A stretch of 63,032 nt of DNA, counting the filler, from Octopus bimaculoides (Eukaryota): assembly GCF_001194135.2 (NCBI RefSeq). It is 5 parts of 5 records of this genome, joined end to end, with 100 filler letters (N's around TTAATTAATTAA, not from the genome) between each part and the next. Parts side by side here need not be neighbours in the genome. Positions count along the whole stretch, not along the records: positions 32,639 to 41,192 come from NC_069001.1; 4 more parts are not named here. One strand, written 5' to 3'. The position numbers and the translations under genes were made by a program. This document shows positions 32,639-41,192 of the stretch, one piece after another. The notes below the pieces were generated by a model. The model made no database searches and was not told the DNA's origin. It saw only the letters and a list, made by a program, of their open reading frames with translations. Each line of letters opens with the position of its first letter. Position 1 is the stretch's first letter.

Positions 32639-35600
32639 CTTCGTAGGTACGTACGTACGTTCCTACGTTCGTTCATTCGATCGTTCGTTAGTGCGTTCGT
32701 TCTTGCTTACGTACGTTCTTTCTGCAGTCCGTCCGTTCGGTCGTTCGTACGTACATACGTTCGTTCGTTATTTCATTCGTACGAACGTACGTTCCCACGG
32801 TCGCACTTGCGTTCGTTCGTTCAATCGCCCGTTCGTACGTACGTGTGTACGTATGTTCGTTCGTTCGTTCATTCGTACGTACATACGTACGTATATACGT
32901 TGGTTCGTTTGTACGTACGTACTTACGTACATGCGTGCGTACGTACGTACGTTCGTTCGTTCGTTGGATCGTTCGTTTGTTCTTTTGTGCATTCGTACGT
33001 ATGTACATTCGTTCGTTAGTTCGTTCCTCGATCGTTCGTACATTCGTAGATACGTACGTACGTCCCTACCTTCGTTCGTGCTTACGTACGTACGTTCGTT
33101 CATTCGTTCGTACGTTCGTTCGGTTGGTCGGTCGTTCGTACTTACGTATGAACGTACGTTCGTTCTTTCGTTCATTCGTACGTATATACGTACGTTCGTT
33201 TGTACGTACGTACTTACGTACGTACGTTGGTTCGTTTGTCCGTTCCTTAGTGTGTTCCTACTTTCGTAGGTACGTACGTACGTTCCTACGTTCGTTCATT
33301 CGATCGTTCGTTAGTGCGTTCGTTCTTGTTTACGTACGTTCTTTCTTCAGTTCGTCCGTTCGGTCGTTCGTACGTACATACGTTCGTCCGTTCGGTCGTT
33401 CGTACGTACATACGTTCGTTCGTTCGTTATTTCATTCATACGAACATACGTTCCTACGTTCGTTCGTTCGTACGTACGTACGAACGCACTAACGAATGAA
33501 GTTACTTACGTACGTATTTACGTAAGAGCGAACGAAATATAGTACGTACGTAATTACGTACATTCTTACATTCGTTCGTTCCTTCAATCGTTCTTTCTTT
33601 TTGTGTTCGATTGATCGTTCATTGGTGCGTTCGTACGTACGTACTTTTGATCGTTCTTTCGTTGGATCGTTCGTTCATTCGTACGTACGTAGTACGTTCG
33701 TTCTTTCGTTCGGTCGGTCTTTCGTACTTACGTATGTACGTACGTTCATTCGTACGTACATACGTACGTACATACGTACGTACGTACATACGTTGGTTCG
33801 TTTGTACGTACGTGCGTTCGTTGGACAGTTCGTTTTTTTCTTTTGTGCATTCGTACGTACGTACGCTCGTTCGTTAGTTCGTACGTTCGTAGCTACGTAC
33901 GTACGTTCTTTCGTTCGTACGTTCGTTTATTCGTCCGTCTGTCCGGTCGGTCGTTCGAACATACGTATGTACTTTCGTTCGTTCGTTATTTCATTCCAAC
34001 GAACGTACGTTCCTACGGTCGCTCATGCGTTCGTTCGTTCGATCGCTCGTTCGTTCGATCCTAAATACTTAATTACGTACGTACGATATTTCGTTCGTTC
34101 GTACGTACATACGTAAGCACGTAAGTTCAACCGTTAGTTCATTCGTAGGTTCGTTCGTTCGTACGTACGTTCGTTCGTTCGTACGTTCTCTTGCTCCTTC
34201 ATTTCATTCGTTCATTCTTACGTACGTACGTACTTTCGTTCGTTCGTACGTTCGTACATACGTTCATTCGCTCGCTCGTTCGTTCGTTCTTACGTACGGA
34301 GGTACGTAGATGCTTTTGTTCGTTTATTCTGTCCGTCCGTACGTACGTACACAAGTCCATCGTTGGATCGTTCTTTCTTTCGTACCTACATACATACTTA
34401 CACTCGTTCGTTCCTTCAATCGTTCTTTCTTTATATTGTTCTATTGTTCGTTCATTTGTCCGTTCGTACGTACGTTCGTTCGTTCGTCGTACGTTCGTTC
34501 GTACGAAGGTACGTTCATTCGTTCGTTCACACTTACGAATGTACGTACGTTCATTCGTTCCTACATACGTACGTACGTATATATGTTGGTTCGTTTGTAC
34601 GTACGTTGATACGTGCGTACGTACGTTCATTCGTTCCATCTTTCGTTAGTACGTACGTACGTACGTTCGTTCGTTCGTGCTTACATACGTACGTTCGTTC
34701 TTTCGTTCGTACGTACGTTCGTTCGTTCATCCGTCCGTTCTGTCGTTCGTACGTACGTACGTATGTTCGTCGTTATTTCATTCCTACGAACGAAGGTACC
34801 TACGGTCGCTCTTGCGTTCGTTCGTTCGTTCTTTCATACGTACGTACTTATGTACGTTCGTTTCCTTGTTTGTTCGTTCGTTCCTTCGTACAAACATTCA
34901 ATCATTCTTTCTTTTGCTTAATTGGTCCGTTCGTACGTACGCACGNNNNNNNNNNNNNNNNNNNNNNNNNNNNNNNNNNNNNNNNNNNNNNNNNNNNNNN
35001 NNNNNNNNNNNNNNNNNNNNNNNNNNNNNNNNNNNNNNNNNNNNNNNNNNNNNNNNNNNNNNNNNNNNNNNNNNNNNNNNNNNNNNNNNNNNNNNNNNNN
35101 NNNNNNNNNNNNNNNNNNNNNNNNNNNNNNNNNNNNNNNNNNNNNNNNNNNNNNNNNNNNNNNNNNNNNNNNNNNNNNNNNNNNNNNNNNNNNNNNNNNN
35201 NNNNNNNNNNNNNNNNNNNNNNNNNNNNNNNNNNNNNNNNNNNNNNNNNNNNNNNNNNNNNNNNNNNNNNNNNNNNNNNNNNNNNNNNNNNNNNNNNNNN
35301 NNNNNNNNNNNNNNNNNNNNNNNNNNNNNNNNNNNNNNNNNNNNNNNNNNNNNNNNNNNNNNNNNNNNNNNNNNNNNNNNNNNNNNNNNNNNNNNNNNNN
35401 NNNNNNNNNNNNNNNNNNNNNNNNNNAATTGGTCCGTTCGTACTTACGCACGTACTTTTTGTTCGGCGTTCGTCGTTTGTTCGTTGGATCGTTCGTTCAT
35501 TCGTACGTACATACGTACTTTCGTTGTTTTGTTCGTACGAAAATACGTTGGTTCGTTTGTACGTACGTACTTACGTACATGCGTACGTACATACGTTCGT

Positions 35601-38600
35601 TCGTTCGTTGGATCGTTCGTTTGTTCTTTTGTGCATTCGTACGTATGTACATTCGTTCGTTAGTTCGTTCCTCGATCGTTCGTACATTCGTAGATACGTA
35701 CGAACGTTCCTACCTTCGTTCGTGCTTACGTACGTACGTTCGTTCGTACGTTTATTCTGTCGTCCGTCCGTACGTACGCAAGTCCGTACTTTCGTTCGTT
35801 GGATCGTTCTTTCGTTCGTACGTACGTTCGTTTCCTCGTTTTTTCGTTCGTACCCGCGTACGTACATTCGTTTATTCCTTCAATCGTTCTTTCTTTTCTT
35901 GTTCAATCATTCGTTCATTGGTCCGTACGTACGTGCGATCGTTTCTTCGTTGGATCGTTCGTAGGAATGAAATAACGAATGAACGTACGTACATACGTAA
36001 GTACGAACGACCGAACGGACGGACGGGCGAAAGAACGAACGTAGGTACGTACGAACGAACGTACGTAAGCACGATCGAACGAAGGAACGTACGTACGTAC
36101 CTACGAACGTACGAACGAACGAAGGAACGTACAAACGAATGAACGTACGTAGGAATGCACAAAAAACAAATGAACTATCCAACGAACGAACGCACGTACG
36201 TACGTAGTACGCACGTACGTATGTATGTAGGTACGAATGAACGTACGTAAGTCCGAACGAACGAAAGAATTTAATTTCGTACGAACGAAAGAACGAACGT
36301 ACGTACGAACGAACGAGCGAATGATCGTATGTACGTATGTACGAGCAAACGATAGTACGTAAGTACGTACGAACGAACGAACGAAATGAAGGAGCAAGAG
36401 AACGTATGAACGAACTAACGAATGAACTTAAGTACGTACGTATGTACGTACGAAAAAACTATATATCCTAAGTACGTAATTACGTATTTACGATCGAACG
36501 AACGAACGCAAGAGCGACCGTAGGAAAGTACGTTCGTAGGAATGAAATAACGAACGAAATTACGTACGTACGAACGACCAAACGGAAGGACGGGCGAAAG
36601 AACCAAGGTACGTACGAACGAAAGAACGAACGAACGTACGTACGTACCAACGAACGAACGAACGTACGTACCCACGAACGTACGAACGAACGAAGGAACG
36701 TACTAACGAACGAAGGATTGAAGGAACGAACGAATGTACGTACGTAGGTACGAACGAACGAACGAACGGACAGACGAACGAAAGAATAAACGAACGAAAG
36801 CATCTACGAACCTCCGTACGTACGAACGACCGAAAGGACGGACGGGCGAAAGAGCGAACGTACGTACGAACGAACATACGCACTTAAACACGAATGCACA
36901 AAATACAAATGAACGAGCCAACGAACGAACGTACGTACGTACGCATGTTCGTACCTACGAACAAACCAACGTATATACGTACGTACGTACGTACGAACGT
37001 ATGTAGGTACGAATGAACGTACGTACGTACGTATGTAGGTACGAATGAACGTACGTACATACGTAGGTCCGAACAAATGAACGAACAAACAAGGAAACGA
37101 ACGTACGTAAGTACGTACGAAAGAACGAACGAACGAACGTAAGTACGGTCGGTCGGACGGACGGACGGACGGACGGACGACAGAATAAACGAACGAAAGC
37201 ATCTAGGTACCTCCCTACGTAAGAACGAACGAACGAGCGAATCAACGAATGTACGTATGTACGAACGAACGACAGTACGTACGTACGTTCGAAATGGAGG
37301 AGGACGCGAACTTACGGACGAACGTACGTTCGAACGAACGTACGAACGAACTATCGTACTTACGTAATTCTTTCGTTCGTTCGTTGGATCGTTCGTTCAT
37401 CCGTACGTACGTACGTAAGTTCGTTCTTTCTATCATACGAAAGTAGGTTCGTTCGTTCTTTCGGTCGTTCGTACTTACGTATGTACGTACGTTTATTTGT
37501 ACGTACATACGAACGTACGTACGTATATACGTTGGCTCGTTTGTACGTACGTACGTTCGTTGGAATGAATTAACGATCGAAAGTAAGTACATACGTACGT
37601 ACGAACGACTGAACGGACGGAAGGACGGACGAACGAACGTACGTATGAATGAAAGAAGGAACGTACGTACTTGAGCACGAACGAACGAACGATCGAAGGA
37701 ACGAACAAACGAACGAAAACACGTACGTACGAATGCACAAAGGAAAAACGAACGATCCAACGAACGGACGTACGTACAAACGAGCCAACGTATATACGTA
37801 CGTACGTTCGTATGTACGTACAAATAAACGTACGTACATACGTAAGTACGAACGACCGAAAGAACGAACGAACATACTTTCGTATGATAGAAAGAACGAA
37901 CTTACGTACGTACGTACGTACGTACGGATGAACGAACGATCCAACGAACGAACGAAAGAACTATCGAACGTACGTACGCACGAACGGACCAATGAACGAA
38001 CGATCGAACAAAACAAAAAAGAACAAATAAACGAACGAACGAATGTACGTACGTAGGTACGAACGAACGTACGAACAAACGAGGAAACGAACGTACGTAC
38101 GAATGAACGAACGATCGAACGAACGAACGAACGAACGAACGTACGAACGAACTAACGAGTGAACTTACGTACGAACGTAAGTACGTACGGAAGAACGAAA
38201 CATCGTCACTACGTAATTACGTATTTACGATCGAACGAACGAACGAACGTACGTACGTTAGTACGTACGAAAGAGCGATCGAACGAACGAACGCAAGAGC
38301 GACCGTAGGAACATACGTTCGAAGGAATGAAATAAGGAACGAACCTACGTATATATGTACGTACGAACGACCGAAAGAACGAACGTACGTACGAACGAAA
38401 GAACGAACGTTCGTACGTAAGCACGAATGAACGAACGAATGAACGTACGTACGTACGTACGTACGTACGTACGAACGGACCAATCGAACAAACAAAAGTA
38501 AGGATTGAAGGAACGTACGAATGTAAATATGTACGTAGGTACGAATGAAAGAACGAACGAACGAACGAACAAACGTGGGAACGAAAGCACGTAAGTAAGT

Positions 38601-41192
38601 ACGTAAGTACGTACGAAAGAACGAACTATCGAACGAACGATCGAACGTACGTACGGTCGGACGGACGGACGAAAGAATAAACGAACGAAAGCATCTACGT
38701 ACCTCCGTACGTTAGAACAAACGAATGAGCGAATCAACGAATGTTCGTATGTACGAACCAACGATAGAACGTCCGTACGTTCGAATGAACGAGATAACGG
38801 ACGAACGAAATGAAGGAGCACGCGAACGAACGAACGTACGTACGAACGAACGAACGTACGAACGAACATAAGTACGTACGAACGAACGAACGTACGAACG
38901 AACATAAGTACGTACGAACGAACGAACGAGCGATCGAACGAACGAACGCAATAGCGACCGTAGGAACGTACGTTCGTTGGAATGAAATAACGAGCGTATG
39001 TAAGTNNNNNNNNNNNNNNNNNNNNNNNNNNNNNNNNNNNNNNNNNNNNNNNNNNNNNNNNNNNNNNNNNNNNNNNNNNNNNNNNNNNNNNNNNNNNNNN
39101 NNNNNNNNNNNNNNNNNNNNNNNNNNNNNNNNNNNNNNNNNNNNNNNNNNNNNNNNNNNNNNNNNNNNNNNNNNNNNNNNNNNNNNNNNNNNNNNNNNNN
39201 NNNNNNNNNNNNNNNNNNNNNNNNNNNNNNNNNNNNNNNNNNNNNNNNNNNNNNNNNNNNNNNNAACGTCCGTACGTTCGAATGAACGAGATAACGGACG
39301 AACGAAATGAAGGAGCACGCGAACGAACGAACGTACGTACGAACGAACGAACGTACGAACGAACATAAGTACGTACGAACGAACGAACGAGCGATCGAAC
39401 GAACGAACGCAAGAGCGACCGTAGGAACGTACGTTCGTTCGAATGAATTAACTATCGAAATTAAGTACATACGTACGTACGAACGACCGAACGGACGGAA
39501 GGACGGACGAACGAACGTACGTATGAATGAAAGAAGGAACGTACGTACATGAGCACGAACGAACGAACGATCGAAAGAACGAACGTAGGAACGTACTACG
39601 TGCCTACGAACGAACGAATGAACGATCAAACGAACGAACGTAGGAACGTACGTACGTAAGAACGTACGAACGAACGAACGAACGTACTAACGAACGAACG
39701 TACGTACGTACGAATGCACAAAAACAAATGAACGATCCAACGAACGAACGAATGAACGTACGTACGTACGAACGATTGGACCAATCGAACAAACAAAAGA
39801 AAGGATTGAAGGAACGTACGAATGTAAATATGTACGTACGAACAAACGTGGGAACGAACGCACGNNNNNNNNNNATATGTACGTACGAACAAACGTGGGA
39901 ACGAACGTACGTAAGTAAGTACGTAAGTACGTACGAAAGAACGAACTATCGAACGAACGATCGAACGCACGTACGGTCGGACGGACGGACGAAAGAATAA
40001 ACGAAGGAAAGCATCTACGTACCTCCGTACGTTACAACAAACGAACCAACGTATATACGTGCGAATGAACGTACAAACATACGTAAGTACGAACGACGGA
40101 AAGAACGAGCGAACGTACGTACGAACGAACTAATGAATGAAATTACGTACGTACGTATGAACGTACGTAAGTACGAACGAAATATCGTACGTACGTAATT
40201 ACGTAATACGATCGAACGAACGAGCGATCGAACGAACGAGCGATCGAACGAACGAACGAACGCAAGAGCGACCGTAGGAACGTACGTTCGTTGGAATGAA
40301 TTAACTATCGAAAGTAAGTACATACGTACGTACGAACGACCGAACGGACGAACGAACGTACGTATGAGTGAAAGAAGGAACGTACGTACGTGAGCACGAA
40401 CGAACGAACGATCGAACGAACGAACGTAGGAACCTACATAAGAACAAACGAATGAGCGAATCAACGAATGTACGTATGTACGAACCAACGATAGTACGTC
40501 CGTACGTTCGAATGAACGAGATAACGGACGAACGAAATGAAGGAGCACGCGAACGAACGAACGAACGAACGAACGTACGAACGAACAAACGAACGAACAT
40601 AAGTACGTACGAACGAACGCAATAGCGACCGTAGGAACGTAAGTTCGTTGGAATGAAATAACGAGCGTATGTAAGTACATACGTACGTACGAACTTCCGA
40701 ACGGACGGACGGACGAAGGAACGAACGTACGTACGAACGAACGACCGTACGTACCTACGGACGTACGAACGAACGGAGGAATGATCAAACGAACGAGCGT
40801 ACGTAAGTACGAATACAGAAAAGAAAGACGAACGATCCAACGAACGGACGTAAGTACGTACGTAAAAACGAACCAACGTACATACGTGCGTACGTACGTA
40901 CGTACGATTGAACGCACGAACATACGTAAGTACGAACGACGGAAAGAACGAGCGAACGTACGTACGAACGAACTAATGAATGAAATCACGTACGTACGTA
41001 TGAACGTACGTAGGTACGTACGTAAGTACGTACGTACGAACGAAATATCGTACGTACGTAATTACGTAATACGATCGAACGAACGAACGCAAGAGCGACC
41101 GTAGGAACGTACGTTCGTTCGAATGAATTAACTATCGAAAGTAAGTACATACGTACGTACGAACGACCGAACGGACGGAAGGACGGACGAAC
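32639..41192. repeat. Complex CpG-rich satellite built from CGTT/CGTA (AACG/TACG) tetramers, with higher-order structure and inversions
   Basis: Continuous over 8.55 kb (three large internal gaps and one small one). T-rich polarity at 32639-35960 and about 37368-37555; A-rich elsewhere. Recurrent non-tetramer landmarks. Confidence 0.97.

What the first reader, a model, noticed from the sequence alone, without database searches (positions are those of the whole stretch)
32639..41192. 8.55-kb CpG-saturated satellite built from self-complementary tetramers
Seen: nearly the whole block consists of CGTT/CGTA/CGAT/CGGA-type tetramers, with a CG roughly every 4-5 nt by inspection, in an otherwise AT-rich, CA/TA-repeat genome. 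CpGs are not decayed to TG/CA. (TACG)n is both palindromic and strictly alternating purine-pyrimidine. Inference: a distinct satellite class, possibly heterochromatic or centromeric, that is unmethylated, young or homogenised, and is prone to Z-DNA and cruciform formation. I do not recognise it as a described family, but cannot exclude that it is.
Basis: partly seen in the sequence, partly recalled or inferred. Interest (0 to 1): 0.78.

Follow-up and report, generated by a model that had tools for sequence, protein, structure and literature searches.

The report
Degenerate CpG-rich tetranucleotide (WACG)n repeat array
This 8.5-kb piece is non-coding DNA made almost wholly of worn copies of a four-base unit (AACG or TACG), a simple-sequence satellite whose unit happens to contain CpG; that is uncommon but ordinary in kind, and its assembled layout is unreliable.

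Summary
The block is real. All 7,804 read bases form a period-4 array: CpG observed/expected is 3.12, and 96% of CG-to-CG distances are multiples of 4. On one strand the unit is WACG: AACG 30%, TACG 23%, and 89% of units lie within one mismatch. Several details are overstated. Mean CpG spacing is 6.3 nt, not 4-5. One third of units have lost their CG. Only about a quarter of units are self-complementary; the main unit AACG/CGTT is strand-asymmetric. Perfect (ACGT)n runs reach only 31 nt.

On top of the tetramers lie 100-330-nt blocks that recur at 81-100% identity, in both orientations and in variable order, with no regular long period. Indels between copies are mostly multiples of 4, and unit types cluster. 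This fits in-register slippage followed by block duplication. CpG transitions are only 1.9 times non-CpG transitions, which argues against heavy germline methylation.

All three N gaps are flanked by duplicated sequence, so the layout and length are not trustworthy. There is no gene, no RNA family and no tRNA. No relative turned up in prokaryote, viral, plasmid or protein collections, and I found no published description.

Copy number, chromosomal location and source organism could not be tested. It is a new member of a known kind, of modest interest.

The parts
32639..34945 (-). Contig 1. The WACG array reads on the minus strand (CGTT/CGTA on plus).
   Evidence: TRF: period 4, 559.8 copies, 67% matches. 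AT skew about -0.4 to -0.5. Orientation map.
33479..33545 (+). Short island of opposite orientation inside contig 1. It is entered through a palindromic bridge, (CGTT)3-(CGTA)3-(CGAA), at 33457-33494.
   Evidence: Orientation map. Near-palindrome of 17 matched pairs over 38 nt, with at most 2 mismatches.
34946..35426 (.). Assembly gap 1 (481 N), flanked by a 26-nt duplicate.
   Evidence: 34920-34945 against 35427-35452: 26 nt, 1 mismatch. Chance is 17 in 200,000.
35427..35962 (-). WACG array on the minus strand, up to the main orientation switch.
   Evidence: TRF 35467-35962, period 4, CGTT. Orientation map. Junction sequence.
35963..37358 (+). WACG array on the plus strand (AACG/TACG).
   Evidence: TRF 35974-37139, period 4, AACG. 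AT skew turns positive. Orientation map.
37145..37179 (+). Local (ACGG)n variant run.
   Evidence: TRF: 8.8 copies, 93% matches.
37368..37564 (-). Left arm of an inverted duplication. It is a block of minus orientation inside the plus-oriented array.
   Evidence: 197 nt, 94% complementary to 37756-37952, with 191 nt between the arms. BLAST gives 95%. Folds at -271.6 kcal/mol, z -35.
37756..37952 (+). Right arm of the inverted duplication.
37561..39005 (+). WACG array on the plus strand, to gap 2.
   Evidence: TRF 37593-38948, period 4. Orientation map.
38443..38473 (.). Longest perfect (ACGT)n run in the piece: 31 nt, self-complementary and alternating purine-pyrimidine.
39006..39264 (.). Assembly gap 2 (259 N). 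The right flank repeats the last ~240 nt of the left flank.
   Evidence: 38768-38892 equals 39265-39389 at 100% over 125 nt. The gapped alignment has one 36-nt indel.
39265..39864 (+). WACG array on the plus strand.
   Evidence: TRF 39320-41044, period 4, CGAA. Orientation map.
39865..39874 (.). Assembly gap 3 (10 N), flanked by a 37-nt duplicate.
   Evidence: 39828-39864 against 39875-39911: 37 nt, 1 mismatch.
39875..41192 (+). WACG array on the plus strand, running to the edge of the piece with no unique flank.
38933..38993 (+). One of ten copies of a ~100-nt landmark module with a nearly invariant core, consensus CGAACGAACGAACGCAAGAGCGACCGTAGGAACGTACGTTCGTTGGAATGAAATAACGA. Landmark A of the other copies starts near 36508, 38293, 39409, 40262, 40619 and 41089 on plus, and near 32791, 34009 and 34796 on minus.
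   Evidence: Landmark map. Ten-copy alignment with 84% mean column identity and a largely invariant core that stays in 4-nt register.

Best explanation
The piece is a non-coding, degenerate compound tetranucleotide array. It is a microsatellite-derived simple-sequence satellite whose unit on one strand is WACG (AACG or TACG, with minor GACG, CACG and ATCG).

Proposed history:
1. A pure tetramer array grew by replication slippage or unequal exchange, in steps of whole units.
2. Point substitutions wore it down to about 54% exact units without disturbing the 4-nt register.
3. Worn stretches of 100-330 nt were then copied as blocks by unequal crossing-over, gene conversion or segmental duplication. 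The resulting modules recur in variable order.
4. Because (TACG)n reads the same on both strands, such runs can act as hinges where orientation flips.
5. CpG survives because germline CpG methylation of this DNA is low, as is usual for intergenic and repeat DNA of invertebrates with mosaic methylation. No special protection is needed.

No cellular function is needed to explain it.

Shown here: the register, the unit spectrum, the clustering of unit types, the indel lengths, the block copies, the palindromic hinge and the weak CpG-specific decay.
Inferred: the mechanisms (slippage, unequal exchange, template switching), the methylation state, and that the array is long or abundant in the real genome.
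For: - Register: 96% of CG-CG spacings are multiples of 4, with 1,778 in-register units against 45 breaks.
- Periodicity: 68% self-match at lag 4, decaying over about 100 nt, with no long-lag peak.
- Unit spectrum: position 1 is A 54% / T 39%; position 2 is A 87%; position 3 is C 76%; position 4 is G 86%.
- Unit-wise dynamics: 40 of 64 indels between paralogous copies are multiples of 4, against about 25% expected by chance. Unit types cluster: P(TACG after TACG) is 0.67 against P(TACG after AACG) 0.30, chi-square 65, p = 6e-16.
- Block copies: 214 self-HSPs, the best 95-100% identical over 125-217 nt, in both orientations. Landmarks recur as four modules in variable order. Ten copies of one module share a largely invariant core that is still in 4-nt register.
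- Hinge: the strand switch at 33457-33494 lies in (CGTT)3(CGTA)3(CGAA).
- Weak CpG decay: CpG transitions are 4.65% against 2.47% at non-CpG sites, with equal transversions. TG plus CA make up 214 of 599 lost-CG units.
- Non-coding: ORFs are long on both strands only because AACG and TACG units carry no stop codons. Nothing in Pfam exceeds its cut-off. Protein searches return only low-complexity FVRS-type hits at 61% identity or less, with none at E <= 1e-30. All Rfam hits are far below gathering scores and fall on both strands. There are no tRNAs.
- Context, only if the source is an octopus: in O. bimaculoides fewer than 10% of CpGs are methylated, and repeats and transposons are nearly unmethylated (PMC9476566).
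Against: - No read depth, long reads or other scaffolds were available, so copy number and true array length are unknown.
- All three gaps have duplicated flanks. The module order is irregular and there are orientation switches. Part of the 'block shuffling' and the inversions could therefore come from the assembler rather than from biology.
- Substitution counts are not independent, because blocks were copied.
- The same paper reports relatively higher methylation on octopus 'satellite' repeats than on other repeats, so the low-methylation inference is not secure.
- Lost-CG changes are strand-asymmetric: C to A 145 against G to T 40. The model does not explain this.
Confidence: 0.7

Rival explanations
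1. The layout is an assembly construct. The genome holds many short or medium WACG arrays, or one array of quite different structure. The 8.55-kb scaffold, with its orientation switches, inverted duplication and shuffled modules, would then be a chimeric walk through a repeat graph, stitched by scaffolding. This rival concerns the layout and length, not the nature of the repeat.
For: - Every gap is flanked by duplicated sequence.
- 125 nt are identical across gap 2.
- Module order is irregular.
- Orientation flips lie at palindromic runs or at module-internal inverted stretches, where a graph can switch strand.
- The 197-nt, 94% inverted duplication looks like a fold-back.
Against: - Contigs contain exact internal repeats of 66-106 nt and were still assembled through them.
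- Non-simple landmark modules recur ten times with a shared core. That requires a real family of longer units, not independent microsatellites.
- No unique sequence appears anywhere in the piece. The only CG-poor stretches are copies of one worn module.
Confidence: 0.25
2. The piece is a high-copy heterochromatic or centromeric satellite whose CpG density and palindromic or alternating units give it a structural role (Z-DNA, cruciforms, binding of CpG-reading proteins).
For: - The whole piece is repeat with no unique flank.
- Near-identical copies confuse the assembler.
- CpG density is very high, 15.8 per 100 nt.
- Alternating purine-pyrimidine tracts of 12 nt or more cover 20% of bases.
Against: - There is nothing on location, copy number or chromatin.
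- Three quarters of units are not self-complementary.
- Perfect (ACGT)n runs reach only 31 nt.
- Ordinary stretches fold only a little better than shuffles.
- There is no regular long period of the kind common in centromeric satellites.
Confidence: 0.12
3. The piece is the internal tandem-repeat region of a transposable element. Many mollusc satellites sit inside Helitron/Helentron-like or MITE-like elements (my own knowledge).
For: Recurrent non-simple modules in both orientations would fit dispersed element copies that have been merged.
Against: - No terminal structures, no unique element body and no ORF with a transposase, helicase or reverse-transcriptase domain.
- The modules themselves are in tetramer register, so they derive from the array rather than from an element.
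Confidence: 0.07
4. The piece is a contaminant (prokaryote, virus or plasmid) or a sequencing artefact.
For: No relative was found anywhere, so the origin is unproven.
Against: - Landmark and generic 20-24-mers have no match in 185,579 prokaryote species genomes or in IMG/VR.
- The only metagenome hit is a chance 20-mer in a GC-rich soil contig.
- There is no plasmid match.
- Multi-kb degenerate tetranucleotide arrays are a eukaryotic feature (my own knowledge).
- Worn units and structured modules are not what a chemistry artefact looks like.
Confidence: 0.03
5. The piece is a protein-coding gene for a low-complexity repeat protein (FVRS/YVRT or NERT/YVRT repeats).
For: There are ORFs of up to 324 aa without gaps.
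Against: - Long ORFs occur on both strands and in several frames at once, because the units lack stop codons.
- There is no Pfam domain.
- No homologue was found beyond translated microsatellites and unrelated repeat proteins.
- The exact ORFs are absent from the 15-billion-protein collection.
Confidence: 0.01

Closest known systems
(AACG)n and (ACGT)n simple repeats, i.e. ordinary tetranucleotide microsatellites
   Same: The unit and the period-4 head-to-tail structure are the same. Examples seen here are a (CGTT)n array of 197 nt at 81% matches in an ENA contig, and a (TTCG)n array of 404 nt at 83% in a JGI contig.
   Different: This array is about 20-40 times longer as assembled. It mixes two main unit types, is more worn (64-69% matches), has a superimposed block-repeat layer and orientation switches, and shows no unique flank.
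Tetranucleotide simple-sequence satellites: hermit crab Pagurus pollicaris (TAGG)n satellite, and snake Bkm (GATA)n/(GACA)n (my own knowledge, not tested here)
   Same: These are also multi-kb arrays of a 4-nt unit with variant units interspersed. They are non-coding and are thought to grow by slippage and unequal exchange.
   Different: Their units contain no CpG and are not partly self-complementary. Their abundance and location are established experimentally, whereas here they are unknown.
Drosophila dodeca satellite and other CpG-containing simple satellites (my own knowledge)
   Same: A CpG-bearing short-unit satellite in an invertebrate with little or no CpG methylation, so CpG is retained.
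   Different: The unit is 11-12 nt and G+C-rich, with a known pericentromeric location. There is no sequence relation to this array.
Higher-order-repeat satellites such as primate alpha satellite
   Same: Longer blocks are re-amplified on top of a basic unit.
   Different: There is no regular long period here, and the blocks occur in variable order and in both orientations.
CpG islands
   Same: CpG observed/expected is far above 0.6 (3.12), and CpG density is higher than in typical islands.
   Different: G+C is only about 45%. The piece is tandemly repetitive and has no gene or promoter context. The high ratio follows from the unit sequence rather than from escape within a methylated background.

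Membership tests
Simple-sequence (microsatellite-derived) satellite DNA | Head-to-tail tandem repetition of a short unit (2-10 nt) | tested here: met
   Period 4 across all four contigs. 96% of CG-CG spacings are multiples of 4. Self-match at lag 4 is 68%.
Simple-sequence (microsatellite-derived) satellite DNA | Array length well beyond microsatellite scale (over 1 kb) | tested here: inconclusive
   The piece has 7.8 kb of read bases and no unique flank. But three gaps with duplicated flanks make the assembled length unreliable. The longest gap-free contig is 3.58 kb.
Simple-sequence (microsatellite-derived) satellite DNA | High copy number or long arrays in the genome | not testable with these tools
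   No reads and no eukaryote assemblies are available. The protein and DNA collections gave no relatives.
Simple-sequence (microsatellite-derived) satellite DNA | Non-coding | tested here: met
Centromeric or heterochromatic satellite | Location at centromeres or in heterochromatin; CENP-A or H3K9me3 association | not testable with these tools
   The piece has no flanks and there are no chromatin data.
Higher-order-repeat satellite | A regular long period made of diverged monomers | tested here: not met
   In three of the four regions tested, no lag above about 100 nt stands out; the short 35963-37358 region has weak bumps at 539-579 nt. TRF finds no long period. Modules recur in variable order.
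Self-complementary (palindromic) repeat able to form cruciforms or Z-DNA | Units identical to their reverse complement, and long uninterrupted alternating purine-pyrimidine or palindromic tracts | tested here: inconclusive
   Only 26% of units are of a self-complementary class. The longest perfect palindrome is 30 nt and the longest alternating tract 43 nt; such tracts cover 20% of bases. Folding z-scores are -3.8 and -4.6 for ordinary stretches. Whether the structures actually form was not testable.
CpG island (Gardiner-Garden and Frommer criteria, my own knowledge) | G+C above 50% and CpG observed/expected above 0.6 over at least 200 nt | tested here: not met
   Observed/expected is 3.12, but G+C is 42-48% in every 500-nt window free of N.
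Protein-coding repeat gene | One preferred reading frame and strand, with homologues or domains | tested here: not met
   ORFs lie on both strands and in several frames. No domain. No true homologue.
Structured RNA gene or miRNA cluster | A match to an Rfam family at its gathering score | tested here: not met
   The best hit scores 42 bits against a gathering score of 81-101. Hits fall on both strands and are caused by TACG hairpins. No tRNA.

The most novel reading that the evidence does not exclude
The WACG array could be a major, high-copy satellite of its host genome, for example a centromeric or pericentromeric landmark of a cephalopod. It would be kept CpG-dense and unmethylated over megabases, giving a natural platform for CpG-reading chromatin proteins. 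Its palindromic TACG hinges would drive frequent inversions.
Probability: 0.1. Interest if true: 0.6.

Novelty: new member of a known kind. Interest (0 to 1): 0.27.

Why it matters
CpG-containing motifs are among the rarest microsatellite classes in most eukaryotes. CG dinucleotide repeats are rare in every genome surveyed, and the motifs never found at all are mostly CG-rich; methyl-CpG decay is the usual explanation (PMC3397955). A multi-kb array of CpG-bearing tetramers is therefore uncommon.

It also carries an internal clock. The non-CpG A of the unit is 13% diverged, while the C and G of the CpG are 24% and 14% diverged. This argues, from sequence alone, that the DNA has not been heavily methylated in the germline.

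In practice it marks a place where the assembly cannot be trusted. If it proves abundant, it would give a simple FISH or k-mer marker for a chromosome domain. Otherwise it is an ordinary simple repeat.

Tried and rejected
- Coding gene: rejected. ORFs lie on both strands, Pfam finds nothing above its cut-offs, the exact ORFs are not in the collection, and the two protein searches gave only low-complexity hits.
- RNA genes: rejected. All Rfam hits are far below threshold, and there is no tRNA.
- Telomeric repeat: no tandem TTAGGG repeat (two or more units) is present.
- Foreign inserts or unique sequence inside the block: none. The only four CG-poor stretches are copies of one worn module.
- Regular higher-order period: not found.
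- Relatives by DNA: none. One metagenome scan gave a single chance hit. Two prokaryote-genome scans gave 0. Three viral scans gave 0. Plasmid BLAST gave 0.
- Literature: eight full-text searches and several papers gave no description of a WACG, (AACG)n or (ACGT)n satellite. The 2015 octopus genome paper is not held.
- Source organism: I could not identify it.
- Longest exact repeat per contig, as a test of assembly reliability: 66, 106, 21 and 68 nt. This was not decisive.

Full report
**Scope.** The piece has 7,804 read bases in four contigs (32639-34945, 35427-39005, 39265-39864, 39875-41192) and 750 N in three gaps.

**Gaps, tested first.** Each gap is flanked by duplicated sequence.
- Gap 1: the last 26 nt before the gap (34920-34945) recur as the first 26 nt after it (35427-35452), with one mismatch.
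- Gap 3: 39828-39864 recurs as 39875-39911 (37 nt, one mismatch).
- A suffix/prefix match of that quality arose in only 17 of 200,000 random pairs of places within this same repeat.
- Gap 2: the first 188 nt after the gap (39265-39452) align to 38768-38991 before it, with one 36-nt deletion. The two are identical over 125 nt.

The contig ends therefore overlap, or are neighbouring repeat copies that the assembler could not merge. The N lengths, the continuity and the tetramer register across the gaps are all unreliable. No conclusion below depends on them.

**The observation.** The block is real and far from chance.
- CpG occurs 1,234 times, observed/expected 3.12. AC and GT are at 2.0. CA, TG, GC, CC, GG, AG and CT are at 0.28-0.44.
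- CG-to-CG spacings are 4 (764), 8 (308), 12 (62) and 16 (35). In all, 96% are multiples of 4.
- Self-match is 68% at lag 4, against 11-21% at lags 1-3.
- TRF reports period-4 arrays of 124-560 copies at 64-69% matches.

With each stretch turned to one strand, the unit is WACG. Position 1 is A 54% or T 39%, position 2 is A 87%, position 3 is C 76% and position 4 is G 86%. The counts are AACG 539, TACG 417, GACG 48, ATCG 38 and CACG 24. There are 1,778 in-register units against 45 register breaks. Of the units, 54% are exact WACG and 89% lie within one mismatch.

**What is overstated.**
- Mean CpG spacing is 6.3 nt, not 4-5.
- One third of in-register units (599) have lost the CG.
- Only 26% of units belong to self-complementary classes (TACG, ATCG). 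The commonest unit, AACG/CGTT, is strand-asymmetric, which is why the AT skew sits near -0.5 or +0.5.
- Perfect (ACGT)n runs are at most 31 nt and cover 6% of bases.
- Alternating purine-pyrimidine tracts of 12 nt or more cover 20% of bases, the longest being 43 nt. The longest perfect palindrome is 30 nt.

**Anatomy above the tetramer.**
- Orientation changes along the piece. It is minus from 32639 to 35962, with a small plus island at 33479-33545. It is plus from 35963 to 37358, minus from 37359 to 37560, and plus from 37561 to 41192.
- Self-BLAST finds 214 pairs of longer copies. The best are 95-100% identical over 125-217 nt and others are 81-90% over up to 339 nt. They lie in both orientations at irregular distances.
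- Non-simple landmarks recur as about four modules whose order varies.
- Ten copies of one module align at 84% mean column identity. They share a largely invariant core, consensus CGAACGAACGAACGCAAGAGCGACCGTAGGAACGTACGTTCGTTGGAATGAAATAACGA, which is itself still in 4-nt register. The modules are therefore worn pieces of the tetramer array that were later copied as blocks.
- There is no regular long period.
- The only CG-poor stretches (four, 62-69 nt each) are copies of one worn module. There is no unique sequence and no tandem telomere repeat.

**Evidence on how it grows.**
- Indels between paralogous copies are multiples of 4 in 40 of 64 cases, against about 25% expected by chance.
- Unit types cluster. 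P(TACG after TACG) is 0.67 against P(TACG after AACG) 0.30, p = 6e-16.
- Both results point to gain and loss of whole units (slippage or in-register unequal exchange), continuing after the blocks were copied.
- One orientation switch lies inside a palindromic bridge, (CGTT)3(CGTA)3(CGAA), at 33457-33494. The switches at 35962 and 37560 use the short inverted stretch CGTTCGTTGGAATGAA, which is native to a module.
- Because (TACG)n is its own reverse complement, such runs are natural hinges for inversion. That could occur by recombination or template switching, or equally by a strand switch in an assembly graph.
- A 197-nt inverted duplication (37368-37564 and 37756-37952, 94%) would fold into a very stable hairpin (-271.6 kcal/mol, z -35). 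Ordinary stretches fold only modestly better than shuffles, z -3.8 and -4.6.

**CpG decay.** Three measures agree that CpG-specific decay is weak.
1. Of the 599 lost-CG units, TG plus CA make up 214. Among single changes the counts are AG 145, TG 135, CA 79, GG 64, CC 51 and CT 40. The methyl-CpG products are therefore about 42% of single changes, an ordinary transition share.
2. Between paralogous copies, transitions are 4.65% at CpG sites and 2.47% at other sites (1.9-fold). Transversions are equal at 6.2% and 6.3%. In heavily methylated genomes the excess is roughly ten-fold (my own knowledge).
3. Within the unit, the non-CpG A is 13% diverged, against 24% for the C and 14% for the G.

The array is old at the tetramer level yet keeps most of its CpGs, which suggests low germline methylation. 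Two caveats apply. The counts are not independent, because blocks were copied. The changes are also strand-asymmetric (C to A 145 against G to T 40), which I cannot explain.

In O. bimaculoides fewer than 10% of CpGs are methylated, and repeats and transposons are almost unmethylated. Annotated 'satellites' are somewhat higher, however (PMC9476566).

**What it is not.**
- Not a gene. Long ORFs occur on both strands and in several frames only because AACG and TACG carry no stop codon.
- Pfam finds nothing above its cut-offs, and the exact ORFs are not in the 15-billion-protein collection.
- The word-indexed protein search returned only translated short (CGTT)n-type microsatellites at 54% identity or less.
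- The exhaustive search of 1.84 billion representatives gave no hit at E <= 1e-30. Its best hits are unrelated NYVRNYTRNF-type repeat proteins.
- Rfam hits are all miRNA hairpin families at 20-42 bits, against gathering scores of 55-101, and fall on both strands. They are artefacts of TACG palindromes. There is no tRNA.

**Relatives and contamination.**
- A conserved landmark 20-mer gave one chance hit in a GC-rich soil contig.
- It gave nothing in 185,579 prokaryote species genomes or in IMG/VR. A generic 24-mer and a second landmark also gave nothing. Plasmid BLAST gave nothing.
- Two contigs behind the weak protein hits carry ordinary (CGTT)n and (TTCG)n microsatellites of 197 and 404 nt. 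These show what the common form of this motif looks like.
- Full-text searches found no description of such a satellite. A survey of 154 species notes that CG dinucleotide repeats are rare in every genome studied, that the motifs never found are mostly CG-rich, and that methyl-CpG decay is the usual explanation (PMC3397955).
- None of the collections holds eukaryote genomes as DNA. The absence of relatives therefore says little about abundance or taxonomic spread.

**Verdict.** The piece is a degenerate compound tetranucleotide array, (WACG)n, a microsatellite-derived simple-sequence satellite. It grew by in-register slippage, wore down, was re-amplified in blocks, and flips orientation at palindromic hinges. 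It retains CpG because CpG-specific decay has been weak (confidence 0.7).

The main rival concerns the layout rather than the nature of the repeat: the 8.55-kb arrangement may be partly an assembly construct (0.25).

It is a new member of a known kind. The unit is unusual because it carries CpG, but the architecture and the likely mechanism are ordinary. Interest is modest.

Noticed in passing
window 34920-34945 / 35427-35452; 39828-39864 / 39875-39911; 38768-38991 / 39265-39452: All three N gaps are bracketed by near-identical duplicated sequence (26 nt, 37 nt and about 200 nt). The contig ends overlap, or are adjacent repeat copies, and the stated gap lengths are probably meaningless.
   Followed up: yes
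window 37368-37564 and 37756-37952: A 197-nt inverted duplication, 94% complementary, with a 191-nt spacer. As a single strand it folds at -271.6 kcal/mol (z -35). It is either a real fold-back or an assembly artefact.
   Followed up: partly
window 33457-33494: An orientation switch lies exactly in a palindromic bridge, (CGTT)3(CGTA)3(CGAA). The self-complementary TACG run acts as a hinge between CGTT-strand and AACG-strand arrays.
   Followed up: partly
whole piece, on the WACG strand: Lost-CG units are strand-asymmetric. C to A (xxAG) occurs 145 times against G to T (xxCT) 40, and C to T 135 against G to A 79. This is unexplained. It may reflect copied blocks or a strand-biased mutation process.
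   Followed up: no
window 37145-37179: A clean (ACGG)n run, 8.8 copies at 93% matches. It is a local variant unit that expanded on its own.
   Followed up: no
window 38823-38892 / 38859-38928: A 36-nt (nine-unit) tandem duplication at 96% identity. The same 36 nt are missing from the copy after gap 2.
   Followed up: partly
window 34382-34449, 34860-34928, 35862-35924, 39774-39835: These are the only CG-poor stretches (3 or fewer CG per 60 nt). All are copies of one worn module containing CCTTCAATC / GGATTGAAGG.
   Followed up: partly
window 33719-33800, 32837-32956, 36965-37068 and others: There are dozens of sub-threshold Rfam matches to repeat-derived miRNA families (mir-1277, mir-297, mir-466, mir-3149, mir-5014) on both strands. 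They are artefacts of TACG/TATG hairpins, not genes.
   Followed up: yes
L001 968-987: The only metagenome match to the landmark 20-mer lies in a GC-rich soil contig with no tetramer repeat. It is a chance match.
   Followed up: yes
L002 2552-2883: In an unrelated 1.23-Mb ENA contig fetched for comparison, a very clean 16-nt tandem repeat (TGCTGTCGTAAAGCTT, 20.8 copies, 97%) lies beside a 197-nt (CGTT)n microsatellite.
   Followed up: no
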